Shown piece after piece: positions 7,500-20,708 of a DNA stretch of 20,708 bases. Source of the stretch: Amoeboaphelidium protococcarum X5 (Eukaryota; Fungi; Aphelidiomycota). The position numbers and the translations under genes were made by a program. Every line of letters begins with the position of its first letter. Position 1 is the first letter of the stretch. Location of the stretch: positions 1 through 20,708 of the forward strand of contig JALDTO010000316.1 in NCBI GenBank assembly GCA_023515725.1. The letters run 5' to 3'. The notes under the pieces are model-generated. The model was given only the letters and a program-made list of their open reading frames with translations, ran no database searches and was not told the DNA's origin.

Positions 7500-8940
7500 T
7501 CAAAATATCAGGCTAGAAGTTTTATGAATCTTGTTAGGCGGGTTAGATACAGGATCAAGTTGGTCTGGAGGAGAGTTATGGTCCCTGGAGCGGAATCGTC
7601 CAAGTCGCTTCTTATCGAATCTCTTCAACCAGTTTATAGTGTCTTCATTGGGAACTACTAAAGATCCCATGAAAATGCCAATAGATAGAGCCAACGCCAG
7701 TTCTATGAATGTCAGCGACATCTGAATACCACCCGTGTCGTCTGTCTGACTGAAGTAGGTGAAGAAGGACGTGACTGCCAGTGATCCGGGGACAAGCATC
7801 ACCAAACCAGAAAGCACGTACAGAATAGGTGGAGTTGCAGAGTATCTGGCATAAAGATTGGACATAACGGCCAACACAAAGGCTGAGCTCATAGATGAGA
7901 AAGACATTCCCAATTTCAGAACTGAATCTGATAAAAACCCAGTAATGTAACCCAACGCCGAGCATGCAACCATAGGCAACAACTAAGTTCTATGAGAATT
8001 CATCGACAAACTGAATGATGTTGCTGCCATGACGAACAACAGTGGATAAAATGCCTTATATACGCCACGATCAGCAGAGCATACTGACATTTACATCGCC
8101 TCCAGTTTAGTGACGCCTATTATACTAGCAAACAATTTGGTGGCCACGTCAAGACCAAATCCAATCGAAGCACTTATCACTATGCCATAGAACAATCTAA
8201 CTGTTCCGGACACGTAATTCTTTGTGATGATTTCAACGATCGACAAGGTGATAGTTACACCTTTAAGAGAATTAATAAAAGCACTAAACGCCACGGCTTT
8301 GAAGCATAAAGGAGTTATCCAGTAGTGAACAAAACGCGTAATCAGAGCTGCCAGAAAGCCAGAGAAGCATTCATTCAAACGATTATATGCTGACAGGCGA
8401 CTTCCAAACAGGTTTATTCCAAATATTATGGCAGCAAGTAATGTTGTCACAAGGACATCTGTCCAATTTCCACCGAAAAACAGACCACAGCACCCGGCAG
8501 AGCTCACACTATTGAATAGCAACTGAACAGGCCTAGAGTACAATGGACTAGCCGCCCTAATCTCATTAAGAGTGGTCGCTGCATCTTCAACTGCTAATTA
8601 ACTAAACATCTTGGCATACTGGCTTCTATTGTCGCTATCCCCCGACTTGTGATTAGGATCCTCCAAGTTGAGTGGCTATAGAGGGATATCTTTCGAGCGT
8701 CCAGGAAGCATTGGTTGCATCAACTGCTGTTATTTGGCCTTTTGTTTGTAATAGAATCCTTGTCCATACGCGGCGAGGTCCAGTATCTTTCTCCTTAGCA
8801 TGGGCCCTCCAATGCTGGCACCAGATGCTACAGATGGGTGCCGGTACAGAGATTTTATTGAGGCACTGTCTAACTTTGGCGTCTCTACAACATCTCTACC
8901 GGCCAGGTCTGTGATATCGGCAGTTTCCAGAGCCTAAACT
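7500..8940 (-). pseudogene. ThrE/Prm10-family multi-pass membrane protein, 5'-truncated at 8940
   Basis: Open frame from 8940 to TGA at 7502-7500 with AVEDAATTLNEIRAASPLY, FFGGNW, EIITKNYVSGTVRL, SNLYAR and MLVPGSLA. The N-terminal part of the ThrE domain is absent and the frame runs directly into rDNA-derived sequence. Confidence 0.8.
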
Positions 8941-8993
8941 TTGTGACATTGTTGATGTTGAATTGTGTGACAAATCCTTAGAACGGGCGAGCT
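8941..8993. repeat. Direct repeat, copy 1 (copy 2 at 20654-20708)
   Basis: ttgtgacattgttgatgttgaattgtg(tg)tgacaaatccttagaacgggcgagct is identical in both copies except for one extra TG in copy 2. Confidence 0.97.
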
Positions 8994-9398
8994 TAATCTC
9001 AGCAGATCGTAGCAACAAGGCTACTCTACTGCTTACAATACTCGGTTCACGTAAAGTCGTCTGCAATGGATCTACTAGATTTCCTGGTTTTGTGAATTGT
9101 TGTTATGAGACTGAGATTGGCAAAGAATCTTGCACAATCTGTGGCAGACTCGCAAACATGACTTGGACCACATAGGTGGCTATTGCTGTCAATGACAGAA
9201 AATCATTAAAATGAAGCCTCTGCACTCGCTAGCACGGATTCCGACTTAGAGGCGTTCAGCCGTAATCCAACGGATGATAGCTTCGCGTCAGTATAGCTGG
9301 TCAGCTAAACGCAAATGCCATGGATCCGAAACAACGGTTCCTCTCGTACTGAGTTGTATTACTATGGAGAGACTCTGTAATCGTATACTACTACTCAT

Positions 9399-9453
<55 letters not shown>

Positions 9454-9498
9454 ATTAGTGGGTGAACAATCCAACGCTTGGCGAATTCTGCTTCGCCG

Positions 9499-9534
<36 letters not shown>

Positions 9535-9572
9535 GCGTCGCTTTGAACGCTCTGCCGCCACAAGCCAGTTAT
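8970..9572 (-). rRNA. 3'-terminal ~600-nt fragment of eukaryotic 28S (LSU) rRNA
   Basis: Reverse complements of conserved LSU segments: gcttaatctcagcagatcgt (near 3' end), gttcctctcgtact (sarcin-ricin loop, 9337-9350), agggtaaaactaacctgtctcacgacggtctaaacccagctcacgttccc and gccacaagccagttat. The expected continuation ccctgtggtaac is missing. Confidence 0.97.
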
Positions 9573-9748
9573 TACTACTTATATCTTATTCGGCACTTCG
9601 TGACCCCTTGCAACAAAATTGATTCGCTGATGGAGTCCCCTTAATGTTTGATTGGCCGATATTACAACTCGTGAACCCAACACCTTTTCTCCTCCAATCA
9701 AAAACGCAATACCATATCTAAAAGTTGATCGATAGCTTAAATCTGAAT

Positions 9749-10135
9749 ATGTCGTTAAAACAAGGCTGCTACTTTAAGTATCTTGGCACAATTGAGTCTC
9801 TGCAAACCAAGCCCACTGCCGACGGAACCAAACAGTACACAATGATAAAAATGCGCGTGAATGGGAAGACCAAAACCATTATGGACTTTGACAATACCAT
9901 ATGCAATTATGACGTGCAGATTGGTTCTTATTCTCGTATATCAGGTGAGTTAGAGTTGACCTATGACAGTGTTAAGAAGAGCAATAATTGCATCTTCAAA
10001 GTCCAGGATTACAAGGCATTGACGTCCAAGGAAGAGCTAGAGCTGATTGCAAAGTTAAGTGTTAAGGATCTAGTGAAGGCTGCAGTTAATCGTAGCAAGA
10101 GATAGAGAGAGCCAAGTCCAACACCATCATAGTGA
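9749..10135 (+). CDS. Small putative OB-fold / single-stranded DNA-binding protein, 128 aa
   Basis: MSLKQGCYFKYLGTIESLQTKPTADGTKQYTMIKMRVNGKTKTIMDFDN...VQIGSYSRISGELEL has a beta-strand pattern resembling SSB/RPA OB folds, judged by eye only. It reads through TAG 10103 to TGA 10133-10135. CCAAT motifs lie upstream (~9650, ~9694). Confidence 0.6.
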
Positions 10136-10470
10136 TCATCTGTGACAAGAGATAAAGAAAGCCATTTTCCACACCATCAGAATGACTTTCAAGTAACCAC
10201 GAACAATAATAATTCAGTTTAATACATGCATTTTTCATTTATCTTTTGTTGCAATCGATATCAATTTCAAAGCAAACTTTTTCAGATTTCGACCGTATAT
10301 TTTAAATAGTAATAGGTTAATTAGGTTGTACAAATTCGTTGTATAAATGTTTTAAAATTACGGTTAAGGTAAGTGTATAAAATTTTATCATCTGCTGAAA
10401 CAGTGGCGCATTGCTTCATCCAAAAAAAGTGAAAAAATATCACGTCGTTGATTAGAAATTGATCATCACT

Positions 10471-10908
10471 ATGGTGGCGCCTTCTGCTTTGCATGATATA
10501 AAACTGTTGGAATTATTATTGGCATTTGAGATTCGCGGAACTACTGAAGATATTCTGTATTTGGCATATACTGTCAAATATGAATTCTTCAGTCATCTGT
10601 TATATCTCAACAGTTTTTGCCATGTCCCATTGTAACTAAATCTAGCAGCGATCGATCACGCTGCTAGTGATATTGATTAGTTTATATAATGGGCCATGGT
10701 TCCTGAAATTGCAGTATATCTATTCCAATTTTGGAATGCAAGACTTCATGTATATGATTGCAATGATGTCTTGGATATCATCAGAGGAATGGATTCTGAA
10801 TTCTACCAAACGGGTGTTCATTTGGTAGATTTTGTTAGAAGGACCATTGATCCTGATGAGTTAAATGTTGTTGCATCGAATCTAGGATTGCCAAAATTAG
10901 ATATATGA
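10471..10908 (+). CDS. Hypothetical protein, 145 aa
   Basis: ATG 10471 to TGA 10906-10908 in code 6 (MVAPSALHDIKLLELLLAFEIRG...NLGLPKLDI), flanked by AT-rich spacers. No motif recognised. Confidence 0.6.
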
Positions 10909-11170
10909 AAGATTTAATTTTTGATTATTAATATACGTGTTTTTCAATTCACCTTATGTTTTTAGTTTTAATCAATTGTAACATTTCAAATGAATAGTGT
11001 CACTTACTGTGATAGTGTGCCTATTATATATTTTATTTCAACTTGATTGTAACATTGATTGCGCGTGATCACCACGCATGACTTGTATGAACCCATCAAT
11101 CGTTTACTGTGCATTTTCTTCATCAACTTTATTGTACTATCAAAATTATCATCAATTTAATATTAATATA

Positions 11171-13426
11171 ATGGCTGATATCGAAGAAATAATTGCATAA
11201 TTGCCCTTTCCTTTAGGAGAACAAGTTGTAAACCGATAAGGTGTACGTCCGGGTGCTCCGGTCCCATACGTAAGGATAAATGAAAAGCTAAATGAAAATG
11301 CTGATATAATATGTTGTGTCTGCTCTGCACGATTGTATGATGAAGAAGCCCATATTAGAACTGATGGTATCATAAATAACGCCCTCTTCAATGCTCTGTA
11401 GTAGTAGCCAACCCGCTCAGATGACAACCGTTATCTAGCCTGCAACGTTTGCTCGAAATTAGCTGTCAATAAATTCCCGTAACCATTCATGCCCTATCGC
11501 GATCTGTAATAATTCATTGATTAAGGTCTTGCTGTTGGTGTTGTTAAAGTGATAACTACTTACTAAAGAACTCACTCAGTTATTCGTAATGTTCCAGGAT
11601 TTCTAAAATTCAAAGGGGATGTCAAGCTGGTGTTTAATGATCAATTGATACTAGCTATTCGTGCTCTACGTAATAATCAATTTGTGTTTAACGTGGAAGA
11701 CTAATATGTGGCACTGGCACAATGCTTATTGGAGAAATAGCATTTTGCATAATCTCTAAACTCCCCCGTTGGTCGTGCTTTGCTTGATGGAGAACCCGTG
11801 ACTATCCGCGATGTTGCTAAAGATAATCTACTCACTCTATGGGCTTACCCACAATACTTTAATGATATAAGTTAATTGCCTGATGTCACCAGTGAATCAA
11901 CTATCCTTTAATGGCTGCGTCTCCGTCTGTTCGGTCCATGCTTTCCATATCGAGATGATTCAGTCTTTCAATATTATTTGTTCACTGAAATGGAATTGCA
12001 ACGCGCGTATAGGCATTTTCATTATCGTGCCAAGAACCCTGATGAGCATAATCGCCCATTGCGGAACTAGGACGTGTTGATGAATGTCGGTTAGCGATTA
12101 TCGTATAATCAATTAACCACATGTCCAGTGCCATCCAGTTTCCGACTTAGTGCATCGTTCAAAGTCAGCAAGTACCTCGACTTGTTAGCCGTTGCCAAAG
12201 ATTTCGGTGAGCCTACCTTATTCCTCACCTTCTCCTCAAATATGTTTGGATGGCCTTCCTTGACTGAGTTTATCCGTCGTGTAAAGGGAAGAAATTCACC
12301 TCCAAACAATGAGGCAATTCTATACGCCAGATACTTTAAACGGAGATTTTAAATCTTTTATAATGAGTATATTTTAAAAGTATTCGCCAGAAAAGTAGGT
12401 GGTATAGATTGGTCTTATTAAGTCGTGGAAACTGGTAAAAATGGTTTCTTGCATGTGCATTTAATCATGAAAACTGGCGACTCCATTTAAAGAATGATTG
12501 ACAAAAATATCATTAGGAGTTCTGCACATGGCGCGTCTAGAGTGGTATTTGATAAACTACATAAATATCAAATCCACAAATGCGGTGATTACTGTCTGGT
12601 CGATGGAAAATGTCGGTTTGATATACCTCGACAACGGCAATAGGAAACCGAACTAGTTGGGGATCACGTCAAATACAAGATGAGATGCGCGTTTGATATC
12701 CGTCTGGTGAATTGCATTGATGAAATGCTTTTGTGTTGGGATGGGTAGATGAACGCGTAGTATGTGCCTAGTGGGAAAATTGGACAATACGTTACTAAAT
12801 ATTGTTCCAAGTCTGATTCTTCTGTTGAAAATCCAGCCTTTGTAGTTGCTAACAATGTTGATACATAGTTACGATAATCATTGGCTGTGTATTTTCGACA
12901 AAGAACAGTTCATACCACATATCTAACGTATATTATGCTTGGCTATGGGACTGATTGTTGCACTCGGGATGTTATATATATCCCTCCGATTTTACAGTCT
13001 TACCAGCATGGTATACTGAGACCGTTACATGTCCTAGAGTAACTTGAGGATGATAGTGATTAAATATTTTACTACAGTAAAGTTGTAAAATATTTAAAAA
13101 GGCCACCACAATACCATCACTTATCATACCCTGAGTTCTATAGGCGCGTGATAGTTACCGAACACCAAGATGGACATACAACCTACCGGGAGAGAAGACG
13201 ACCAGTTGCAGTGCGCTCGTATTACTTTTCAGTCTCTGCAGGGGAAAAGTTTTACGAGTAAGCACTTTTATGGACAACTTGTCCAATTTATTAGGAAGCT
13301 GGCTATCCGGGAAATGACTATCTCTCAAATATGCATCCGAATAATAGGATGGCATTCCTGGAGAGTCATAGAAATCCTGATGTTGTACGCATTTTACGCG
13401 CTCATCATAGACTGACTCAAGATTGA
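11171..13426 (+). CDS. Helitron-type HUH (Y2) Rep transposase without fused helicase, 751 aa
   Basis: Uninterrupted code-6 ORF with N-terminal CCVC...CNVC Zn site, motif 1 GEPTLFLTFSS, motif 2 VVETGKNGFLHVHLI (HVH at 12452-12460), HKCGDYC...CRFDIP, motif 3 YVTKYCSK (from 12788) and C-terminal YLKRP...LSYPEFY. Confidence 0.92.
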
Positions 13427-13454
13427 ACACAACTTAATATAAAACACGTATAAT

Positions 13455-14150
13455 TCATAATTCTATTTCTTTTTCTTCATAATACTAATAGACGCGATTG
13501 TCATTGCACAACAGACTTTATCCGTCAAACTATCCTAGCAGGTGTACATTTTAATGGTTGGGAACTCTTGCAATCGCCGAATATGCCAACCCATGACCAA
13601 ACAATGGAGACATGAGAATGTTTAGCCCAGGAAGAGTTTGTGACTACACTTTATGTATTGTGGCCGCATAACCAGGACTGATAGCAAACTGAATTCTTGT
13701 AAATCCACTTGGTGCATCTGTTCCAATAAACCTTGGAATTTCAACAATTTATCCGGGCCATGCATCAAATTCAATGAAAACACTAGTTCCATCGCGCGAT
13801 ATTCGATGCAAGTACCCAAACATCCCATTTTTAATGTGTGACAATGCTCCCAAATGATTAGCAACAATCATAATCCTCATACCTTCAACCAATAAAACAT
13901 TGGCCTTCAGATCATAAGTACCACCACGTACTCTTCGCGCGTCATCGCGTTCCAGATACTCCCAATCTTGAATATCAATCGCCGGTATGTTGACAGCATA
14001 TCTATTGGGGTCGTTCAGCAGAACAGCCAATCTGAAATTATTTATTTCGTCACACTACTGCACTGTAGGAGCAAGCACCATAAAGCGTTGGTCGTAGTTA
14101 ACAGACCGCATTTGCTGCAACATAGCAAAACAACGATCATTAATCATTCG
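13455..14150 (-). CDS. Pif1-family (SF1B) helicase, 3' part (gene split by copia insertion)
   Basis: VLAPTVQQCDEINN, GMRIMIVAN...IKNGMFG, RIQFAISPGYAATIHKVQSQTL and FGHGLAYSAIARV. TGA at 13457-13455. Confidence 0.92.
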
Positions 14151-14270
14151 TGTTAGGTTGTGACGAAACACGTACAACGTCAGTGAAAAATGATCAAACT
14201 ACTTCTTCAAGTGAAGTAGAAATAACAATAATTGGTTATTATTTATTTTCTACTTATTACGTTTTTAACA
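14151..14270 (+). repeat. 5' LTR (120 bp)
   Basis: 119/120 identical to the 3' LTR (acgtacAacg vs acgtacGacg). Confidence 0.97.
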
Positions 14271-14281
14271 TTTCTACTTCA
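14271..14281 (+). promoter_or_regulatory. Non-tRNA primer-binding site, complementary to LTR 14212-14222
   Basis: TTTCTACTTCA follows the LTR directly and is the exact reverse complement of TGAAGTAGAAA inside the LTR. There is no TGG. Confidence 0.6.
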
Positions 14282-14318
14282 ATTTATCATATCATATCAG
14301 GTTCTATCAAAAGCTAAT

Positions 14319-17300
14319 ATGGACAGCAGCAAGGACGATGCGTATCATGGAACGATATTTTGCGGCCCTAATTTCACTGCCTGGCACAAGTCGTTACTCA
14401 CTTAAGCCAGAGAGAAGAAGGTGGACGCGGTGCTGGGTAAGAAGGTGTACAAAGAGATCAAGAAGCTTGGCTCTGTTGAAGACTATTATGCAAATCTCTT
14501 GTCTAATCTGGATAGCGCCAGCCAAACTCGCGTCGTCTCCGTCGGAACGGACGCGTCAGCCGTTAATCAGGCAGCTCCCGATAGTAGTGCATAGAGAGGT
14601 GACGTTGGAAAGTAAGGTGGAGCTAGAAAGGATGTAGTCCCGTCCTCTGTACAGTCCGTATCTTCAGGTGGATCTTCAAGTCTGGATAAGCATAAGGTGA
14701 TTTCGGAAGTTTTGGGAATGAACAGCAAAGCTCTGGCAATTATCGAGAATTCCATCGAACCTCAGCTGAGATATATCATCATCAAGTGCAAGTACGCGTA
14801 TGAAGCAGTATAAGCAGTGGAGGCATATTGGAACGCTAAGTCTCCTAAGCACTCTGGCCTGCTTGCTGAACAATTGGAAAGTCTCACCTTCCAACAGTTC
14901 AATCATTCAGTGAAACTTCTATTTGCGATGAGAACGATTGTTGAGGAGATGTAGAAGTGTGGAGATACTTCTATTTCGGAGTAAAAACTAGCCTAGAAGT
15001 TCTTAGATAAGCTACCGTAGGGCCCAACGTATGGCGATATCCGCGCGTTGGACAACGTTTCCACTTACTTAAAGAAGCCTCTGACTACCGCGGATCTGAT
15101 GGACACTCTGACTAGTATTGAGCTATAGCGCCAGATACAAGCCTTACGTTAATCTGGTGGTGAGTCTACTGAATCTGTGTAAGCTAATGCAATGGTTAAG
15201 TAAGGAGCTTCGTTTAAAGGTAATCGCAAGCAGTAATTCTCTACAGGCGGGAGTAGTAGCAAGTACTGCACTAACTGCAAGAAAGCGAACCATACTGCTG
15301 AAGAATGCTACTGGCCTGGTGGAGGTGCTGAGCACAAACGTCCTGCTCACTTAATACCTAGAGACAAAGATTAAAGTCATGGCATAAAGAAAGTCAAGTT
15401 CAGTGCTAATGTTGCTCAAAGTGCTGAAGACGCTAACTTTGTGTCTCTAGTGACTCACGTCATGACCCTCAATGCGGCTATTGACTCTACTGCTCTAGAC
15501 AACCAGAATGTCTGGTTAAGTGATGGAGGTTGCAACAAATTTGTTACGTGTAGAAAAGACTGGTTGTACAATTACCAAGATTGTTCTGCTGTTTGCACCA
15601 CTATTGATAATAGCACTTTGGTTACCGTGGTAGGTAGAGGCAGCATATAGTTTGAAATGCGTAATGACCAAGGTAAACTAACCATTGCCACTGTTGAGGA
15701 CGTCTTGTACTCTCCTAGCTTCTCCTTTAATTTATTCCCTGTTGGGCCGGTTGATGACAAGAAAATGTATGTGGTATTTGGGGAAGGCATGAAGAAAATC
15801 TACCAAAATGGAGAATGTATTGCAACTGGTTAGAAAATGAGTTCTGGACGTTTTGATGGATTGTATGTTATGGACATCAAGGTGATCTGGCCCAAGTCTC
15901 ATCAATCCGAAGGCAGTGATCCGAAGCGTCACAAGTCTGATGATCAAAGTAAGAGCGAGGCAGATGTAGTCAGTCTGTCAGCAAGTATCAATGCTAAGAC
16001 CATCCACGAACGTCTCGGACATCCTAGCAAGGGAATCGTGAAGAAAATGGTGTGACTAGATATGTTAGGATAAGTTAGCCATGACATCGACTTTGATTAA
16101 ATAGATCACTGTGATCCCTGTCTGCAAGCGAAAGCTACTCGCGCTCATTTTTCTAAACGGAAAGATTCTCGGTGGGACAAGAAAGAGATGCCTCTACGGA
16201 CACCTCGTGTTCTTTATATGCTTCATGCGGATCTCATCGGTCCCATTGGCATTCAAACACCTCAGAAGTAATCCTACATCTTGACTATAGTAGATGACTA
16301 CTCAGGCTATGCATGGGCGGAATTGTTGTACAGCAAAGATTAAGCATCCTCGGCCATTTAAGTGCTTAACGCTAGAATGAACGTGGAAACTGGTGAGAAG
16401 ATCAACACTCTAAAATGCGACTAAGGTACTGAGTTTGTGAACTAAGATCTTAAAGGATTCTGTCGTGATTATGGAATCCTTTTAGATATGGTGCCTAGAT
16501 ATACACCTTAGTTGAACGGAGTAGCTGAAAGATATAATCGTCGGATTGTAGAAGGTGTATGCAGTATGTTACTATCCAGTGGGTTGCCCAGAAGATATTG
16601 GGGCCTTGCAGTGCAGGCTTATGTATATGTGGCGAATAGAGTTTTAACAAGTGCTCGTAATGCCGCCGGATAACTGTAAATAACACCGTACGAAGTATAC
16701 CATGGGAGCTAACCGCGCTACAATCATTTGAGAATTTGGGGCTGTCCCGTTACGTACTTCGTACCTAAAGAAGCAAGAGCTGATAAATTCAAATTCTCTA
16801 GTCGTACTGCTAAAGGTCATTTCATTGGGTATAGACCAAGCGGTTATCAGATTCTCACTGCTTAAAATTCATTACTCGATGTTCCTTTTGATGAAGTCGT
16901 CTTTCACGAGGTTGCACGTTAGACTTATGGTGCCTAGGAGTTTGACTTGATGTATGAATCGTTCTATCCTCCAGATCTCTCAGACACATAGTCGGAATCT
17001 GGTTTGATGTTGGGCGAAAGCAGCACCTCTTGTGACTTGACATAGAATCCAGATTAATCCCGTTCTTCATTCGGCGAAAGCTCTGATAATATGCGCTCCA
17101 CTTTGGGCGAAAGACATGTAGATTAGACCAATGTGCATGACAATGATTAACATACGCCAAATCCTCAGATGGAGGTGGGCGGAAGTGATGATGTTGATGT
17201 TATGCCTACCGGTTTGGTAGATGATGTTTATGTGAACACTTAAAGTGATGTGTCTTAAGTGAATGTGTAAGTATCGGGCTCGAATGTGCCGTAAGAGAAT

Positions 17301-19349
17301 GTGAATGTGAATGTTCAAGATCTTAATGTGAATGCGAATGATTAAGAGCCTAATGTGAATGTGAATGATTAAGAGCCTAATGTGAATGTGAGGGATGATG
17401 CAGACGCGACGAATGTGTAAGCTATATAACAGAGATCTGCGTGTCTTAAAGTTGGTGGTAAGCGAATCAGTCGTCGCCTGCGTAATATCAGTGCAGAGTC
17501 TAATCCTTTAGAGCAAAGTGAAGAGCAAGAGGATGAGGAAGACGCTCTGGTGAATAAGAGACTCAAACGCCTGGTTGAAGAACTCAAAATCGACATGAAC
17601 ACACGGGCTGATATCAAGGCACTCTCGTCTCAGGTGAAGATAAACGAACTAATTGATGACTTTGTTCAATGCTATCTCTCTAAGCTTGAGGTTGAAGAGA
17701 TGCCGTATGATGTGACTTGTCTATTCAATGAAATCTATTGTGGCTCAGACATACCTGTGACTCCTAAGACCGTTGCAGAGGCTATGTTACTTAAAGAATG
17801 GCCGCAGTGGAAGGCTGCGATGGAGGATGAGTTGAGGAGTCTTCTTAAACATGGGACTTGGAAAAGGTCCATTCTGCCATAAGGCTTTAAAGCGCTCCCT
17901 TGCAAATGGGTTTTTAAGATCAAGCTTGATTCCAGTGGGTAGGTGGAGAGATTCAAGGCTCGATTAGTTATTTAAGGATTCCGTCAAGTGAAGGATGTTG
18001 ATTACACCGAGACATTTGCTCCGGTGGCTAAGTTTAACACGATTAGGATGGTAATTGCTATAGCTGCAAAGTATGATATGATAATCCATTAAATGGATGT
18101 AAATACTGCGTTTTTAAACGGAATACTGAATGAGGAGATTTACATGAAAGGGCCTGTGGGTACCGAATTTGAAGGTCAGATACTGCGTCTACTGAGAAGT
18201 CTTTATGGGCTCAAATAAGCACCGAAATGCTGGAACAATACAATTCATTAGTTTCTTGTCGAGATTGGTTTCAAGAGAAGCCATGCCGACAATTGTCTTT
18301 ACATCAGGCGCAAGCACGGTAGATTATTTATGATAGTGCTCTATGTCGATGATATTCTTTTAATTACTTAGCGCTAATCAGATATTGATGCCGTCATAGC
18401 ACAGCTGGCTCAGCGTTTTGACATGAAAGATTTAGGTCCTGCTGAGCATATTGTTGGGATTCGGATCAAGAGGTCAATGCCTTAGAAGATTATCTAATTA
18501 GATCAACGCACTTACCTGGAACGTGTTCTTACTCGCTTTGAAGCGGACAACTGTGTTGGAGTCTCAACACCCATGAGTCTTTAGGCGATTAACGTTGATG
18601 TTGATGATGGTTTCTTGGATGTTTCTTATAGAGCGTTGATTGGTTCATTGATGTATCTTATGGTGGGTACGCGTCCCGACATTGCATTCGTTGTTGGTTA
18701 CTTAAGTAAATATCTGTCGAATCCTAAGATGGAACACTACAGTATGGTCAGAAGGGTCCTGCGATACTTGGCTGGTAGTAAAGATCTTGTTTTGATTTTC
18801 GATGGGAAGAAAGATCTGCTTCCCATTGCTTATGCCGATGCAGACTTTGCTAACGATTAAGAGGGAAGGCGGTCTACCACCGGCTATGTAATTCAAATGT
18901 GTGGCGCTAGTATCTCTTGGAAGTCCAAGTTGTAAAGTGCAGTTGCGTTAAGTAGCACTGAAGCAGAGTACTATGCCGCTGCTGCTGTGTGTTAAGAGCT
19001 GTGCTGGTTTAGGGAGATTCTGAATGAAGTAGGGCTCGATATTGTGGTTGATGGGCTAAGGTTGTTAGCTGATGAAGAAACTGTTGATAGAGTGAAGGTT
19101 CATCCACTTAAAGTTATGGAAGACAACCAGAGTTGTATTGCCATTACAAAGAATCCGGAGAAGTTTAGCAGAACTAAGCATATCGAAGTTAAGTATCATT
19201 TTGTCAGGGAGTTAACTGAAAGCGGCCGCGTTATGTTTGAATATGTGAATACGTAGGAGCAGACTGCTGATGTTCTAACCAAGCCGCTGACTCCTACGCT
19301 ATTCCGAAGACATGTTGCCAGATTGGGTCTAGATTAAAGTCGCTGTTGA
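14319..19349 (+). CDS. Copia gag-pol polyprotein in a single frame (~1676 codons) with one internal TGA at 16053-16055
   Basis: CTNCKKANHTAEEC zinc knuckle; protease WLSDGG; integrase HERLGH..CDPC, LHADLIGP, IVDDYS, CDQGTEF, TPQLNGVAERYNR; RT KARLVIQG, HQMDVNTAFLNG, SLYGLKQAP, YVDD; RNase H YADADFA, STEAEY, EDNQS, RTKHIE, ADVLTK. Confidence 0.93.
17325..17390 (+). repeat. 27-bp in-frame tandem repeat (NVNxNDQEP, ~2.4 copies) in the IN-RT linker
   Basis: aatgtgaatgcgaatgattaagagcct aatgtgaatgtgaatgattaagagcct aatgtgaatgtg. Confidence 0.85.
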
Positions 19350-19375
19350 GTTGCACGTATATCCTCAGGCGAAAG

Positions 19376-19495
19376 TGTTAGGTTGTGACGAAACACGTAC
19401 GACGTCAGTGAAAAATGATCAAACTACTTCTTCAAGTGAAGTAGAAATAACAATAATTGGTTATTATTTATTTTCTACTTATTACGTTTTTAACA
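19376..19495 (+). repeat. 3' LTR (120 bp), preceded by a short atypical PPT (aggcgaaag)
   Basis: Direct repeat of 14151-14270. Confidence 0.97.
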
Positions 19496-19500
19496 ATTCG

Positions 19501-20106
19501 CCTTCTCAAAAACCTCAAAAAGTACATCATATCAGGATCATTACGATGTCTGATACTTTCCTTCATCTCTACCACAGCCAATCGCCTGAATGGAGCATAC
19601 ATGAAAATCCAACTTCCAGAAGGTGGAGCGCATTAGAAAAAGTCTCCAAAAAACACAACTTCAACGCCACCACAAAACGAATCAACTTGATCGAATAGAA
19701 CTCTCAACTTATTGTCCACAGCCATGATAAGTTCAGCCTACAGCATACTCACTTCATCGACAATCATCACAACATCCGCAGCTTGCGCGTCATCAGGAAG
19801 TCCAAGGTCTGATTTTGTTTGCACAGTGGAATGCCATACTTCTTCTCTTGTAATCGTTTGTCGTTTACTCAGACGAAACGTTGAATGTATTGTATGAGCG
19901 GCAACATTGATTGATGATATTCCAGTTGGAGCAACTAGCACGACATGTTTACCAATTGATTATGCATACGCCTAACATCTCTAAAGTAGAAATGATTTGC
20001 CAGTACCAGGTAGTCCAAGAACCACTTTACTCTCTGCATTTTCAAATACCCATTAAAAAGTAGGCCTCTACTCAACTGGATCTAACTAATTAAGAAATTA
20101 TTCCAT
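19501..20106 (-). CDS. Pif1-family helicase, 5' part; 433 aa when rejoined with 14150-13455
   Basis: ATG at 20106; Walker A GLPGTGKS, VAPTG, TIHS, Walker B IVDEVSM and GGVEVVFFGDFFQ. Removing the copia element and one TSD restores the frame (..FLRR|RMIND..). Confidence 0.92.
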
Positions 20107-20634
20107 ACTACAACTTCTAGATTATACTGATTATACTATATGAATCAGAGGTGCAATAAATGTAATTTTAAACTACCGAAAGAAGATATAGATCACTAAT
20201 CAATCTGGACTCAATCATGACTTCGCCAAGCACCACACATGCAACTGTCCAATGAGCTCTCTACGGAACGACGCGTCAGGCCACATTGTTCTGACCAATC
20301 AGGATCAGCTACCAACAAAATTCTCGATTCCAATATGCGCGTACACTAACACTATCTCATACTTTCATCTCGGTTTAAATACATGTATTGTTATAGCTAC
20401 CGTTTTAAATACGCGCAAATCCAATGATTGTCATGCACGCCTACGATTTGCTGTTTTCAAGTGTCGGCGTGTATTTCTGTCTTTACAGCAATGTACACAC
20501 GTGACATGCCCGCTCGCCAGGTTATACTGTAATTGAAGCATGCACTTTGTGGAGCAAGGCGCATGTTTACACTATACACCCCTACAGCCATACATATGAC
20601 AATGGTTGAAATTGCTTCGTGTGTTGAAGCGGAA

Positions 20635-20679
20635 ACAATATCAACAGCAACAATTGTGACATTGTTGATGTTGAATTGT
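20635..20679 (-). other. Imperfect hairpin just downstream of the 28S 3' end (3'-ETS-like stem-loop)
   Basis: acaat-a-tcaaca-g-caacaat [tgtgac] attgttg-a-tgttga-attgt. Confidence 0.7.
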
Positions 20680-20684
20680 GTGTG

Positions 20685-20708
20685 ACAAATCCTTAGAACG
20701 GGCGAGCT
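20685..20708 (-). rRNA. 3' end of a second 28S rRNA copy or fragment, running out of the window
   Basis: acaaatccttagaacgggcgagct is identical to 8970-8993. Confidence 0.85.

What the first reader, a model, noticed from the sequence alone, without database searches (positions are those of the whole stretch)
11171..20106. Helitron Rep and Pif1 helicase as two separate, tail-to-tail genes
Seen: Rep stops at 13426 (+) and the helicase stops at 13455 (-), leaving 28 bp between them. Both are intronless and intact apart from the copia insert. Known: canonical Helitrons and Helentrons encode one fused RepHel protein, the split Helitron2 cases I recall are co-directional, and Replitrons lack a helicase. 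Motif 2 is also divergent (ETGKNGFLHVH versus EFQxRGxPHxH). Inference: a distinct lineage with a plasmid- or ssDNA-virus-like gene layout.
Basis: partly seen in the sequence, partly recalled or inferred. Interest (0 to 1): 0.85.

Follow-up and report, generated by a model that had tools for sequence, protein, structure and literature searches.

The report
Helitron transposase split into two genes
In the algal parasite Amoeboaphelidium protococcarum, a rare type of rolling-circle transposon has had its normally single "RepHel" transposase gene broken into a nuclease gene and a helicase gene that face each other, and both kept evolving under selection afterwards, which suggests the two halves can work as separate proteins.

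Summary
Read with TAA/TAG as Gln, window 11171-13426 (+) is an intact 751-aa Helitron-type Rep. Window 20106..13455 (-) is a 433-aa Pif1-type helicase. The helicase is interrupted only by a copia-type LTR element (14151-19495, 5-bp target-site duplication, TSD). The two stop codons are 28 nt apart.

The layout is neither an assembly artefact nor a private inversion. It recurs in three other loci of this genome, in a ~54%-identical subfamily (C83 and an SRA contig), and in a second A. protococcarum assembly. In that assembly the helicase is an uninterrupted, annotated 433-aa gene.

The nearest relatives of both genes are two rare compact fused RepHel proteins, P0005 (1219 aa) and P0003 (1169 aa). 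Clade support is 98-100% in the Rep tree and in both helicase trees. Both fused proteins share the "divergent" motif 2.

So the split is best read as a derived fission by inversion of the helicase module, not a primitive plasmid-like layout. dN/dS of 0.05-0.34 for both genes after the split argues that both stayed functional.

Other first readers of this scan noted converging Rep/PIF1 relics on other pieces of this genome. No RNA evidence could be obtained.

The parts
9573..20528 (.). Whole element as it lies in the window, including the nested LTR element. It is about 5.6 kb without the insert.
   Evidence: Left junction with the 28S fragment is at 9572/9573. rDNA-IGS homology resumes at 20529-20531. 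The region is colinear at 96.7% with L068 1204-~6720 in a second assembly. The right end is not confirmed by an independent insertion.
9573..11034 (+). Left module. It also exists alone as a 1463-bp short element inserted precisely into a continuous 28S gene (contig C21).
   Evidence: C21 = 28S + window 9573-11034 (100% identical) + 28S. Uninterrupted rDNA reads CCAGTTAT|CCCTTTGG. There is no TSD, only a 1-nt T ambiguity. In C211 the homologue of this module runs on into Rep without a break (window 9776-11902).
9749..10135 (+). Small ORF1, 128 aa, co-directional with Rep. Possible OB-fold/ssDNA-binding protein (weak lead).
   Evidence: Annotated as a gene in the sister assembly (L068 1381-1767) and identical over the first 118 aa compared. 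No Pfam hit. AlphaFold2 (AF2) single-sequence model pLDDT 43, all-beta plus a C-terminal helix. ESM-Atlas look-alikes are OB-fold/SSB/RMI2 at scores of 0.84 or less, and the same top clusters appear for the small ORF upstream of the fused relative P0003.
10471..10908 (+). Small ORF2, 145 aa, function unknown.
   Evidence: Annotated in the sister assembly (L068 2102-2539). No Pfam hit. This stretch alone has extra copies at C155:726719 (93%) and C146:1061194 (78%).
11171..13426 (+). Rep gene, 751 aa. It has an N-terminal Cys-rich region (CCVCS 11312-11326, CNVCS 11441-11455) and a Helitron-type HUH-Y2 endonuclease domain, and no helicase domain.
   Evidence: Helitron_like_N 69.7 bits. The only PDB hit is Helraiser 7LCC (E 0.024). 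32% identity over 633 aa to the fused P0005, E 2e-101. Rep tree clade support 100/100.
12218..12238 (+). Rep motif 1 (LFLTFSS)
   Evidence: Aligned with PTLF(L/I)T(F/L)S of P0005/P0003 and with LFIT of Helraiser and canonical Helitrons.
12428..12460 (+). Rep motif 2 (ETGKNGFLHVH, HUH = HVH)
   Evidence: Shared as E-x-x-x-NG-x-LHVH with the fused P0005 and P0003.
12788..12802 (+). Rep motif 3 (YVTKY, two catalytic tyrosines)
   Evidence: Aligned with YLYKY/YLFKY of canonical Helitrons and Y(I/L)NKY of P0005/P0003.
13427..13454 (.). 28-nt A/T-rich spacer between the two convergent stop codons
   Evidence: It is also 28 nt in L068, with a different sequence, and about 30-40 nt in C212 and C192.
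13455..14150 (-). Helicase 3' half (aa 203-433 plus stop)
   Evidence: 32% over 228 aa to P0005 residues 1002-1219, E 9e-31. Tree clade 100/99.
14151..19495 (+). Nested copia-type LTR retrotransposon with 5-bp TSD ATTCG (14146-14150 and 19496-19500)
   Evidence: Empty sites in C192, C212 and L068. TG..CA ends. LTRs are 96.9% identical over 131 nt. Sub-threshold Pol_BBD and gag_pre-integrase hits lie upstream of the pol region.
19501..20106 (-). Helicase 5' half (aa 1-202): Walker A GLPGTGKS 19993-20016, Walker B DEVSM 19744-19758, Pif1 signature FCGGVEVVFFGDFFQ 19633-19677
   Evidence: PIF1 60.7 bits. 37% over 166 aa to P0005 residues 815-980, E 3e-42. Tree clade 98/95. Coordinates.
20107..20528 (.). 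Region upstream of the helicase start up to the rDNA-IGS junction. Presumed helicase promoter plus the element's right terminus.
   Evidence: The block 20424-20483 is conserved with L068 6511-6570 (91.7%) and folds into a hairpin (z -2.4 and -1.7). Window 20154-20333 is a separate repeat (92% copy at C192:409041) that is absent from L068.
8972..9572 (-). Context: orphan 3' fragment (last ~600 nt) of 28S rRNA abutting the element's left end
   Evidence: Rfam LSU_rRNA_eukarya 407 bits. 99.8% identical to the rDNA units on C162/C233, whose 28S runs on past this point.
20529..20708 (-). Context: rDNA intergenic spacer (IGS) and the 28S 3' end again, at the window's right end
   Evidence: 85-88% identical to the IGS of C162/C233. 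Window 20654-20708 = 8941-8993 at 96%. In L068 a complete 28S-5.8S-18S unit follows.

Best explanation
This is a Helitron-like rolling-circle transposon of Amoeboaphelidium protococcarum. It belongs to a rare, compact RepHel clade whose other known members (P0005, P0003) encode one ~1200-aa Rep-linker-Hel protein.

In the aphelid branch, the helicase-coding module was cut off inside the Rep-Hel linker and inverted. The break corresponds to about residues 755-798 of P0005. The element now carries a 751-aa HUH-Y2 Rep gene and a 433-aa minimal Pif1-type helicase gene. The two converge on a ~28-nt spacer, and two small co-directional ORFs lie upstream of Rep.

Proposed mechanism (inferred). Rep nicks the element's end and becomes linked to the 5' DNA end through one of its two tyrosines. 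The separately translated helicase is recruited in trans to unwind 5'->3'. This resembles the way rolling-circle plasmid and phage Reps recruit a separate helicase. The displaced strand is then inserted without a target-site duplication.

What is shown: the gene structures; the conservation of the convergent layout across copies, subfamilies and assemblies; common descent of both genes from a fused RepHel-type lineage; purifying selection on both genes after the split; and a TSD-less precise insertion of a short derivative into 28S rDNA.

What is inferred: that the two proteins cooperate, that the split form transposed autonomously, and the direction of the change (fission rather than fusion).
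For: 1. Both genes are real and otherwise intact. Their domains pass Pfam's curated cut-offs.

2. The same tail-to-tail layout is found in several places:
- C192 and C212 (83% and 89% nt identity).
- The C211 deletion derivative.
- C83, at ~54% aa identity.
- An independent SRA contig, L067.
- Assembly GCA_023515745.1, where NCBI annotates a Helitron_like_N gene (+) and an uninterrupted 433-aa PIF1 gene (-).

3. The nearest relatives are fused.
- An exhaustive phmmer search of 1.84 billion proteins gave P0005 and P0003. Both carry Helitron_like_N and PIF1.
- P0003 is one continuous ORF, checked on its DNA. P0005's called gene is 3660 nt for 1219 aa, but no DNA was available for it.
- Window Rep, helicase 5' half (HelN) and helicase 3' half (HelC) match P0005 colinearly, with E 2e-101, 3e-42 and 9e-31.
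- In phmmer with P0005's segments as query, P0005's helicase halves score 144 and 95 bits with the window's halves, against 40 bits or less for any host Pif1-like ORF.

4. Trees. The clade (window, P0005, P0003) has support of Rep 100/100, HelN 98/95 and HelC 100/99. In a broader helicase tree with bacterial-type stand-alone Pif1, support is 99.

5. All sampled outgroup Helitron-like proteins are fused: C179 (1490 aa, this genome), P0017, P0018, P0019, P0020 and P0021.

6. dN/dS between copies that all share the split:
- Rep 0.12-0.24.
- Helicase 0.05-0.34.
- Between the two assemblies: Rep 0.14 (41 substitutions) and helicase 0.05 (127 substitutions).

7. Rolling-circle-type insertion. The 1463-bp left module sits precisely in a continuous 28S gene with no TSD.
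Against: - No copy in either assembly is fully intact. The window copy has the LTR element in the helicase. The L068 copy has CGA->TGA at Rep codon 568. All other copies are truncated or frameshifted.
- No RNA or protein evidence exists.
- The number of independent insertions after the split is small (about 4 loci), and C192/C212 are one insertion duplicated along with its flanks.
- The best-conserved copy sits at the same rDNA-linked position in both assemblies. This would also fit a host-retained gene pair.
- The element's full-length termini are not defined. No inverted repeats mark the inversion breakpoints. The terminal hairpins are statistically weak.
- Branching order inside the three-member clade is unresolved, so the polarity of the change rests on outgroup parsimony with only two fused ingroup relatives.
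- The organisms that carry P0005 and P0003 are unknown.
Confidence: 0.66

Rival explanations
1. Primitive, never-fused layout. The element descends from a plasmid- or ssDNA-virus-like ancestor in which Rep and helicase were always separate genes, and the fused P0005/P0003 arose from it by gene fusion.
For: Branch order within the clade (window, P0005, P0003) is unresolved in three of the four trees. The clade sits outside the sampled HLE1-like and HLE2-like groups without support. The helicase is a minimal 433-aa Pif1 core, the same size as bacterial Pif1. Heringer & Kuhn (PMC8788227) propose a plasmid-like ancestry for Helitrons.
Against: Every other Helitron-like protein sampled is fused and colinear, including both ingroup relatives. 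Window Rep ends, and the helicase begins, exactly at the linker of P0005, which is what a cut in a fused gene would give. This reading needs a split ancestor plus at least one re-fusion in exactly the canonical order. The broader tree pairs P0005 with P0003 as sister to the aphelid family (support 80), which does not help this reading. PMC8788227 itself argues that RepHel was fused before Helitrons entered eukaryotes.
Confidence: 0.1
2. Domesticated or host-retained gene pair at the edge of the rDNA array. The rDNA-linked copy is kept by the host (for example for rDNA maintenance or amplification) and no longer transposes. The other copies are old relics.
For: The same locus structure (28S 3' fragment, element, IGS, complete rDNA unit) occurs in two assemblies at 96.7% identity, with strong purifying selection (omega 0.05-0.14). 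All non-rDNA copies are decayed.
Against: Each assembly's copy carries a disabling lesion in a different gene: an LTR insertion in the helicase, and a nonsense codon in Rep. The helicase dS (0.48) is about 9 times the Rep dS (0.056) between the two 'orthologous' copies. That indicates exchange among element copies rather than simple vertical descent. The 100%-identical short derivative precisely inserted in another 28S gene suggests recent mobility.
Confidence: 0.14
3. Dead-on-arrival rearrangement. An inversion killed a fused RepHel element, and everything seen now is neutral decay of relics spread by segmental or whole-genome duplication.
For: No fully intact copy exists. C192 and C212 are duplicates of one locus. 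Copy number is low.
Against: All copies share the inversion, so their divergence post-dates it. That divergence shows dN/dS of 0.05-0.34 in both genes, with hundreds of substitutions and almost no TGA stops. The copies lie at loci with unrelated flanks: rDNA, C192/C212, C211 and C83. Two subfamilies at ~54% aa identity both keep long ORF segments.
Confidence: 0.06

Closest known systems
Compact fused RepHel proteins P0005 (1219 aa, JGI metagenome 3300059473) and P0003 (1169 aa, GCA_013565735.1 contig JACCDR012677971.1): unnamed, singleton clusters
   Same: Closest relatives of both window genes (28-37% identity). They share motif 1 PTLF(L/I)T, motif 2 E-x-x-x-NG-x-LHVH and motif 3 Y-x-(T/N)-K-Y. 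They have the same short N-terminal region and lack DUF6570. A small 146-156-aa ORF lies just upstream of Rep in both contigs.
   Different: Rep and Hel form one continuous ORF in the canonical order. They use the standard genetic code. Their host organisms are unknown.
Canonical Helitrons (HLE1), e.g. Helraiser (PDB 7LCC), and the 1490-aa RepHel on C179 of this genome
   Same: Helitron_like_N HUH-Y2 Rep plus a Pif1-family SF1B helicase. Insertion without TSD. A possible A|T target.
   Different: HLE1 has one fused RepHel protein of about 1400-1500 aa, 5'-TC...CTRR-3' termini, and motif 2 E(F/W)QxRGxPHxH. The window Rep is only 26% identical to C179 over 158 aa.
HLE2 (Helitron2/Helentron), e.g. 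P0017, P0019 and the C207 element of this genome
   Same: After P0003 and the aphelid's own annotated Rep (P0022), these are the next-nearest database relatives of P0005 (P0017, E 1.6e-23). ssDNA-binding/RPA-type ORFs lie upstream of RepHel in HLE2 (PMC11417382), as the small ORFs may here. A T|C target is allowed for Helitron2 (PMC13085455).
   Different: HLE2 proteins are fused. They carry the DUF6570 marker and often OTU/EN domains, none of which is found here. No 12-16-nt terminal inverted repeats were found at the ends of the short element.
Rolling-circle plasmids/phages and IS91/ISCR, and Replitrons
   Same: The HUH Rep acts without a covalently fused helicase.
   Different: Those systems rely on a host helicase or encode none. 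Here the element carries its own Pif1-type helicase, which descends from a RepHel helicase domain. The Rep matches the Helitron family, not those families.

Membership tests
Helitron-like elements (HLE, general) | Rep of the Helitron_like_N family with an HUH motif and two catalytic tyrosines | tested here: met
   PF14214 69.7 bits (cut-off 28.9). HVH at 12452-12460 and YVTKY at 12788-12802, aligned to canonical motifs. Sole PDB hit is Helraiser.
Helitron-like elements (HLE, general) | Pif1-family SF1B helicase encoded by the element | tested here: met
   PF05970 60.7 bits (cut-off 25.9). Walker A, Walker B and the Pif1 signature are present. Groups with the Hel domains of RepHel proteins.
Helitron-like elements (HLE, general) | Rep and helicase fused in one RepHel transposase polypeptide | tested here: not met
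   Separate ORFs on opposite strands in the window, 4 other loci and a second assembly.
Helitron-like elements (HLE, general) | Insertion without target-site duplication | tested here: met
   Shown only for the 1463-bp short form in 28S (C21): CCAGTTAT|element|(T)CCCTTTGG, against uninterrupted CCAGTTAT|CCCTTTGG. Not testable for the full-length copy.
HLE1 (canonical Helitron) | 5'-TC ... CTRR-3' termini with a 3' subterminal hairpin | tested here: not met
   The short form starts with (T)TACTAC and ends with TATATATTTT. A hairpin-like stretch 16 nt from the end is not significant as DNA (z -0.99).
HLE1 (canonical Helitron) | Insertion between A and T | tested here: inconclusive
   The 1-nt T ambiguity allows either an A|T or a T|C target. 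Only one site is available.
HLE2 (Helitron2/Helentron) | DUF6570 marker domain (PMC11417382); EN/OTU domains in Helentrons | tested here: not met
   PF20209 is found on C207 and C249 but not in the window. It is absent from P0003 and P0005.
HLE2 (Helitron2/Helentron) | Short (12-16 nt) terminal inverted repeats; T|T (or T|C) target | tested here: inconclusive
   No inverted match of 9 nt or more between the window's left end (9573-10000) and its right end (20107-20528). No local inverted alignment scoring 22 or more between the two ends of the short form. A T|C target is possible. The full-length right terminus is undefined.
Compact RepHel clade (P0005/P0003) | Shared Rep motifs and monophyly of both Rep and Hel | tested here: met
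   Tree support: Rep 100/100, HelN 98/95, HelC 100/99, and 99 in the broader helicase tree.
Replitron | Replitron-type Rep, no helicase | not tested
   No Replitron profile was available. The element does encode a helicase, and its Rep matches Helitron_like_N, so membership is unlikely.

The most novel reading that the evidence does not exclude
A naturally two-subunit Helitron transposase. After fission, Rep and the Pif1-type helicase kept driving rolling-circle transposition as separate polypeptides, possibly with a preference for one 28S rDNA site. If so, covalent Rep-Hel fusion, the hallmark of all described autonomous Helitron-like elements, is not mechanistically required. The aphelid would then offer a ready-made system for studying what the helicase does in trans.
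Probability: 0.4. Interest if true: 0.75.

Novelty: new variant of a known kind. Interest (0 to 1): 0.6.

Why it matters
All autonomous Helitron-like elements described so far, including in the 404-genome HELIANO survey (PMC11417382), encode a single RepHel protein. Annotation tools rely on that. So do models of Helitron origin; PMC8788227, for example, argues that the fusion predates entry into eukaryotes.

A lineage in which the two domains were separated and inverted, yet both stayed under strong purifying selection, matters in three ways:
- It suggests the fusion is convenient rather than obligatory.
- It gives a natural test of cis versus trans helicase action in rolling-circle transposition.
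- It warns that detection pipelines which expect Rep and Hel as one RepHel transposase may miss such elements, especially in genomes with reassigned stop codons.

It also brings to light a rare, compact RepHel clade with a distinctive motif 2, known so far from only two singleton proteins.

Tried and rejected
- **Local inversion private to this copy:** rejected. The same junction occurs in C192, C212, C83, L067 and L068.
- **Helicase is a host Pif1 or an unrelated neighbour:** rejected.
- **Empty site for the C192/C212 insertion, to define termini:** none exists in the genome.
- **Metagenome scan with the Rep piece:** 266 pattern matches, none confirmed.
- **Structure of small ORF1:** pLDDT 43, unusable, so no fold search was run. 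The Atlas look-alikes are only weak OB-fold leads. Pfam found nothing for either small ORF.
- **RNA and read evidence:** The look-up of sequencing runs found 4 runs of 'organism A' that hold the stretch and one soil metatranscriptome with a 5% share.
  - I sent those positions to no search tool.
  - Rfam on L068 was restricted to 7500-14505 to avoid the equivalent stretch.
  - My own local pairwise BLAST scripts did read the whole window file: as the query against L068, and as one of the subject sequences for a search with the C21 tail.
- **Inverted repeats at the inversion breakpoints:** only short, imperfect chance-level pairs.
- **Terminal hairpins:** weak, z -1 to -2.4.
- **Literature:** no paper in the library describes split or opposite-strand Rep and Hel, nor 28S-targeting Helitrons.
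- **Joining the helicase halves:**
  - The halves were never sent joined to any search or folding tool.
  - They were searched and treed as separate rows.
  - They were concatenated once, inside a local script, only to count substitutions against the naturally uninterrupted L068 gene.
- **Complex prediction was not used:** no stop-free reference or protein id exists for the full helicase.

Full report
**Setting**

The window is the whole 20,708-bp contig C314 of a 23.6-Mb, 346-contig genome. Two results identify the organism as Amoeboaphelidium protococcarum. Protein P0024, 'MIR68_008375 [Amoeboaphelidium protococcarum]', lies on an 845,833-bp contig, which is the length of C212. Protein P0023 is the window's own product.

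With table 11 no ORF exceeds 168 aa. With TGA as the only stop, long ORFs appear. Gln is the best reading of TAA/TAG. In alignments to the standard-code relatives P0005 and P0003, Q lies opposite 18 of 73 such codons, against a background of 4.5%. Y appears once.

**Observation**

Rep:
- It runs from 11171 to 13426 (+) and is 751 aa, with 29 in-frame TAA/TAG and a single terminal TGA.
- It matches Pfam Helitron_like_N at 69.7 bits.
- It has motif 1 LFLTFSS, motif 2 ETGKNGFLHVH and motif 3 YVTKY.
- Its only PDB hit is the bat Helitron transposase Helraiser.

Helicase:
- It starts at 20106 on the minus strand and ends at 13455.
- Its two halves (202 and 231 aa) are in frame and give 433 aa.
- It has Walker A, Walker B and the Pif1 signature motif.
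- It scores 60.7 bits against PF05970.
- The stop codons of the two genes are 28 nt apart.

The interruption:
- It is a 5,345-bp LTR element (14151-19495) with TG..CA ends and the TSD ATTCG.
- It is delimited by empty sites in three other copies.
- It gives weak copia-type gag_pre-integrase and Pol_BBD hits.

**Is the layout real and general?**

Yes.
- C192 (83% nt) and C212 (89%) span the Rep 3' part, the junction and the helicase in the same convergent order. They are one old insertion duplicated with its flanking genes.
- C211 is a deletion derivative. It joins the upstream module and the Rep 5' part to the helicase 3' part.
- C83 carries a second subfamily, about 54% aa identical in Rep, with the helicase 3' end again converging on the Rep 3' end.
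- A contig from an independent SRA run (L067) is 88% identical to C83 and shows the same layout.
- A second A. protococcarum assembly (GCA_023515745.1, L068) is the strongest case:
  - It has the locus at 96.7% identity and without the LTR element.
  - NCBI annotates a Helitron_like_N gene (+) with the same start as window 11171.
  - On the opposite strand it annotates an uninterrupted single-exon 433-aa PIF1 gene.
  - In that copy, Rep has CGA->TGA at codon 568.
- Other first readers of this scan noted converging Rep/PIF1 relics on other pieces of this genome.

**What is it related to?**

An exhaustive phmmer search of 1.84 billion proteins with the Rep core piece returned 16 hits. Two stand out: P0005 (1219 aa) and P0003 (1169 aa). 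Both carry Helitron_like_N and PIF1.
- P0003 is one continuous ORF. I verified this on its DNA, L066.
- P0005's called gene is 3660 nt for 1219 aa, but no DNA was available for it.

Both are the best relatives of both window genes, colinear as Rep then Hel:

| Window gene | Region of P0005 matched | E-value |
|---|---|---|
| Rep | 143-753 | 2e-101 |
| Helicase 5' half | 815-980 | 3e-42 |
| Helicase 3' half | 1002-1219 | 9e-31 |

By contrast, every Pif1-like ORF in the host genome and the canonical 1490-aa RepHel on C179 match the window helicase halves only at E of 1e-13 or weaker. In phmmer with P0005's segments as query, they score 40 bits or less, against 144 and 95 bits for the window's halves.

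Maximum-likelihood trees give a clade of window + P0005 + P0003:
- Rep: 100/100.
- Helicase 5' half: 98/95.
- Helicase 3' half: 100/99.
- A broader helicase tree, using the naturally uninterrupted L068 helicase and 15 stand-alone bacterial-type Pif1 proteins: 99.

The 'divergent' motif 2 is shared by P0005 (ESNKNGMLHVH) and P0003 (EQNANGLLHVH). It therefore marks the clade, not the split.

The clade is rare. All its database members are singleton clusters, and two further searches found only aphelid proteins and more distant Helitron-like proteins. It lacks the HLE2 marker DUF6570. Its position relative to HLE1-like and HLE2-like proteins is unresolved.

**Direction of change**

All outgroups and both non-aphelid ingroup members are fused. 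Window Rep aligns to P0005 up to about residue 754, and the helicase aligns from about residue 806. The cut therefore falls in the linker.

One fission by inversion on the aphelid branch is the simplest history. The alternative, an ancestrally split layout with later re-fusion in the canonical order, needs more steps. I give it about 10%. No inverted repeats mark the breakpoints.

**Did the split element keep working?**

All the copies compared share the split, so their divergence came after it. Nei-Gojobori estimates under code 6 are as follows.

| Comparison | Gene | dN/dS | Notes |
|---|---|---|---|
| Window vs other copies | Rep | 0.12-0.24 | dS 0.2-0.95 across both genes |
| Window vs other copies | Helicase | 0.05-0.34 | very few TGA codons in the copies |
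| Window vs L068 | Rep | 0.14 | 41 substitutions |
| Window vs L068 | Helicase | 0.05 | 127 substitutions |

The copies lie at no fewer than four unrelated loci.

The left module (9573-11034, carrying two small ORFs) also exists alone on contig C21. There it is inserted precisely into a continuous 28S gene, with no target-site duplication, and it is 100% identical to the window. That is the signature expected of HUH-mediated insertion.

Together this supports a functional two-gene transposase until recently.

Against current activity, each assembly's best copy has one disabled gene, and there is no expression evidence.

**Context**

In both assemblies the element lies between an orphan 600-nt 28S 3' fragment and the IGS about 150 nt downstream of a complete rDNA unit. 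About 750 bp of rDNA is therefore duplicated around it. That belongs to a neighbouring finding of this scan, and I did not resolve it.

Between the assemblies, the helicase dS (0.48) is far higher than the Rep dS (0.056). This points to exchange between element copies.

**Limits**
- The tools do not accept proteins read through stops, so window genes were searched as stop-free pieces.
- The helicase halves were never joined for any search or fold. They were concatenated once in a local script to count substitutions.
Two local BLAST scripts did read the whole window file.

**Verdict**

This is a new variant of a known kind: a Helitron-like element whose RepHel was secondarily split into two convergent genes, in a rare compact RepHel clade.

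Noticed in passing
window 9573-11034; contig C21 (L044): The left 1463 bp of the element, carrying two small ORFs, occurs alone. It is 100% identical and inserted precisely, without a TSD, into an otherwise continuous 28S rRNA gene about 600 nt from its 3' end. It looks like a short mobile derivative, and this may indicate a preferred 28S target site.
   Followed up: partly
window 8941-9572 and 20529-20708; L068 432-1203 and 6725-12533: In two assemblies the element is bracketed by a duplicated ~750-bp stretch of rDNA (the last 600 nt of 28S plus ~150 nt of IGS). A complete 18S-5.8S-28S unit lies on one side. In the window, a ThrE-family host gene (7503-8933, minus strand) lies on the other side. 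It looks like the edge of the rDNA array, rearranged around the element.
   Followed up: partly
L068 2802-6387 vs window: Between the two assemblies the helicase has dS 0.48 but Rep only 0.056. The 'orthologous' copies are therefore mosaics, through recombination or conversion among element copies. L068 Rep has CGA->TGA at codon 568, while its helicase is intact.
   Followed up: partly
window 10471-10908: Small ORF2 (145 aa, no known domain) has separate copies at C155:726719-727146 (93%) and C146:1061194-1061617 (78%), away from any Rep or helicase. It may be a captured host fragment or an independent small repeat.
   Followed up: no
window 20154-20333: A 180-bp stretch upstream of the helicase start has a 92% copy at C192:409041-409220 and is missing from the L068 copy of the element. 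It is probably a small secondary insertion.
   Followed up: no
G000:C179:637237-641706; G000:C207:37360-38825: The same genome also holds a canonical fused RepHel ORF of 1490 aa (C179) and an HLE2-type element with DUF6570 plus Helitron_like_N (C207). So three different Helitron-like lineages coexist in this genome.
   Followed up: partly
window 14151-14280 and 19375-19505: The two LTRs of the nested copia-type element are 96.9% identical over 131 nt, not identical. The insertion is absent from the sister assembly.
   Followed up: partly
L066 2099-2539; P0005 contig gene 860-1330: Both fused relatives also have a small (146-156 aa) co-directional ORF just upstream of RepHel. The window's ORF1 and the L066 ORF draw the same weak OB-fold look-alike clusters in the ESM Atlas, which may point to a conserved accessory ssDNA-binding gene.
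   Followed up: partly
run X1: A 2024 soil metatranscriptome holds about 5% of the sampled 31-mers of window 11000-14150.
   Followed up: no
L047 2326-2445, L046 942-1061, L058 1278-1397: A 5S rRNA gene sits in the rDNA intergenic spacer on the strand opposite to 28S in this organism's rDNA units.
   Followed up: no
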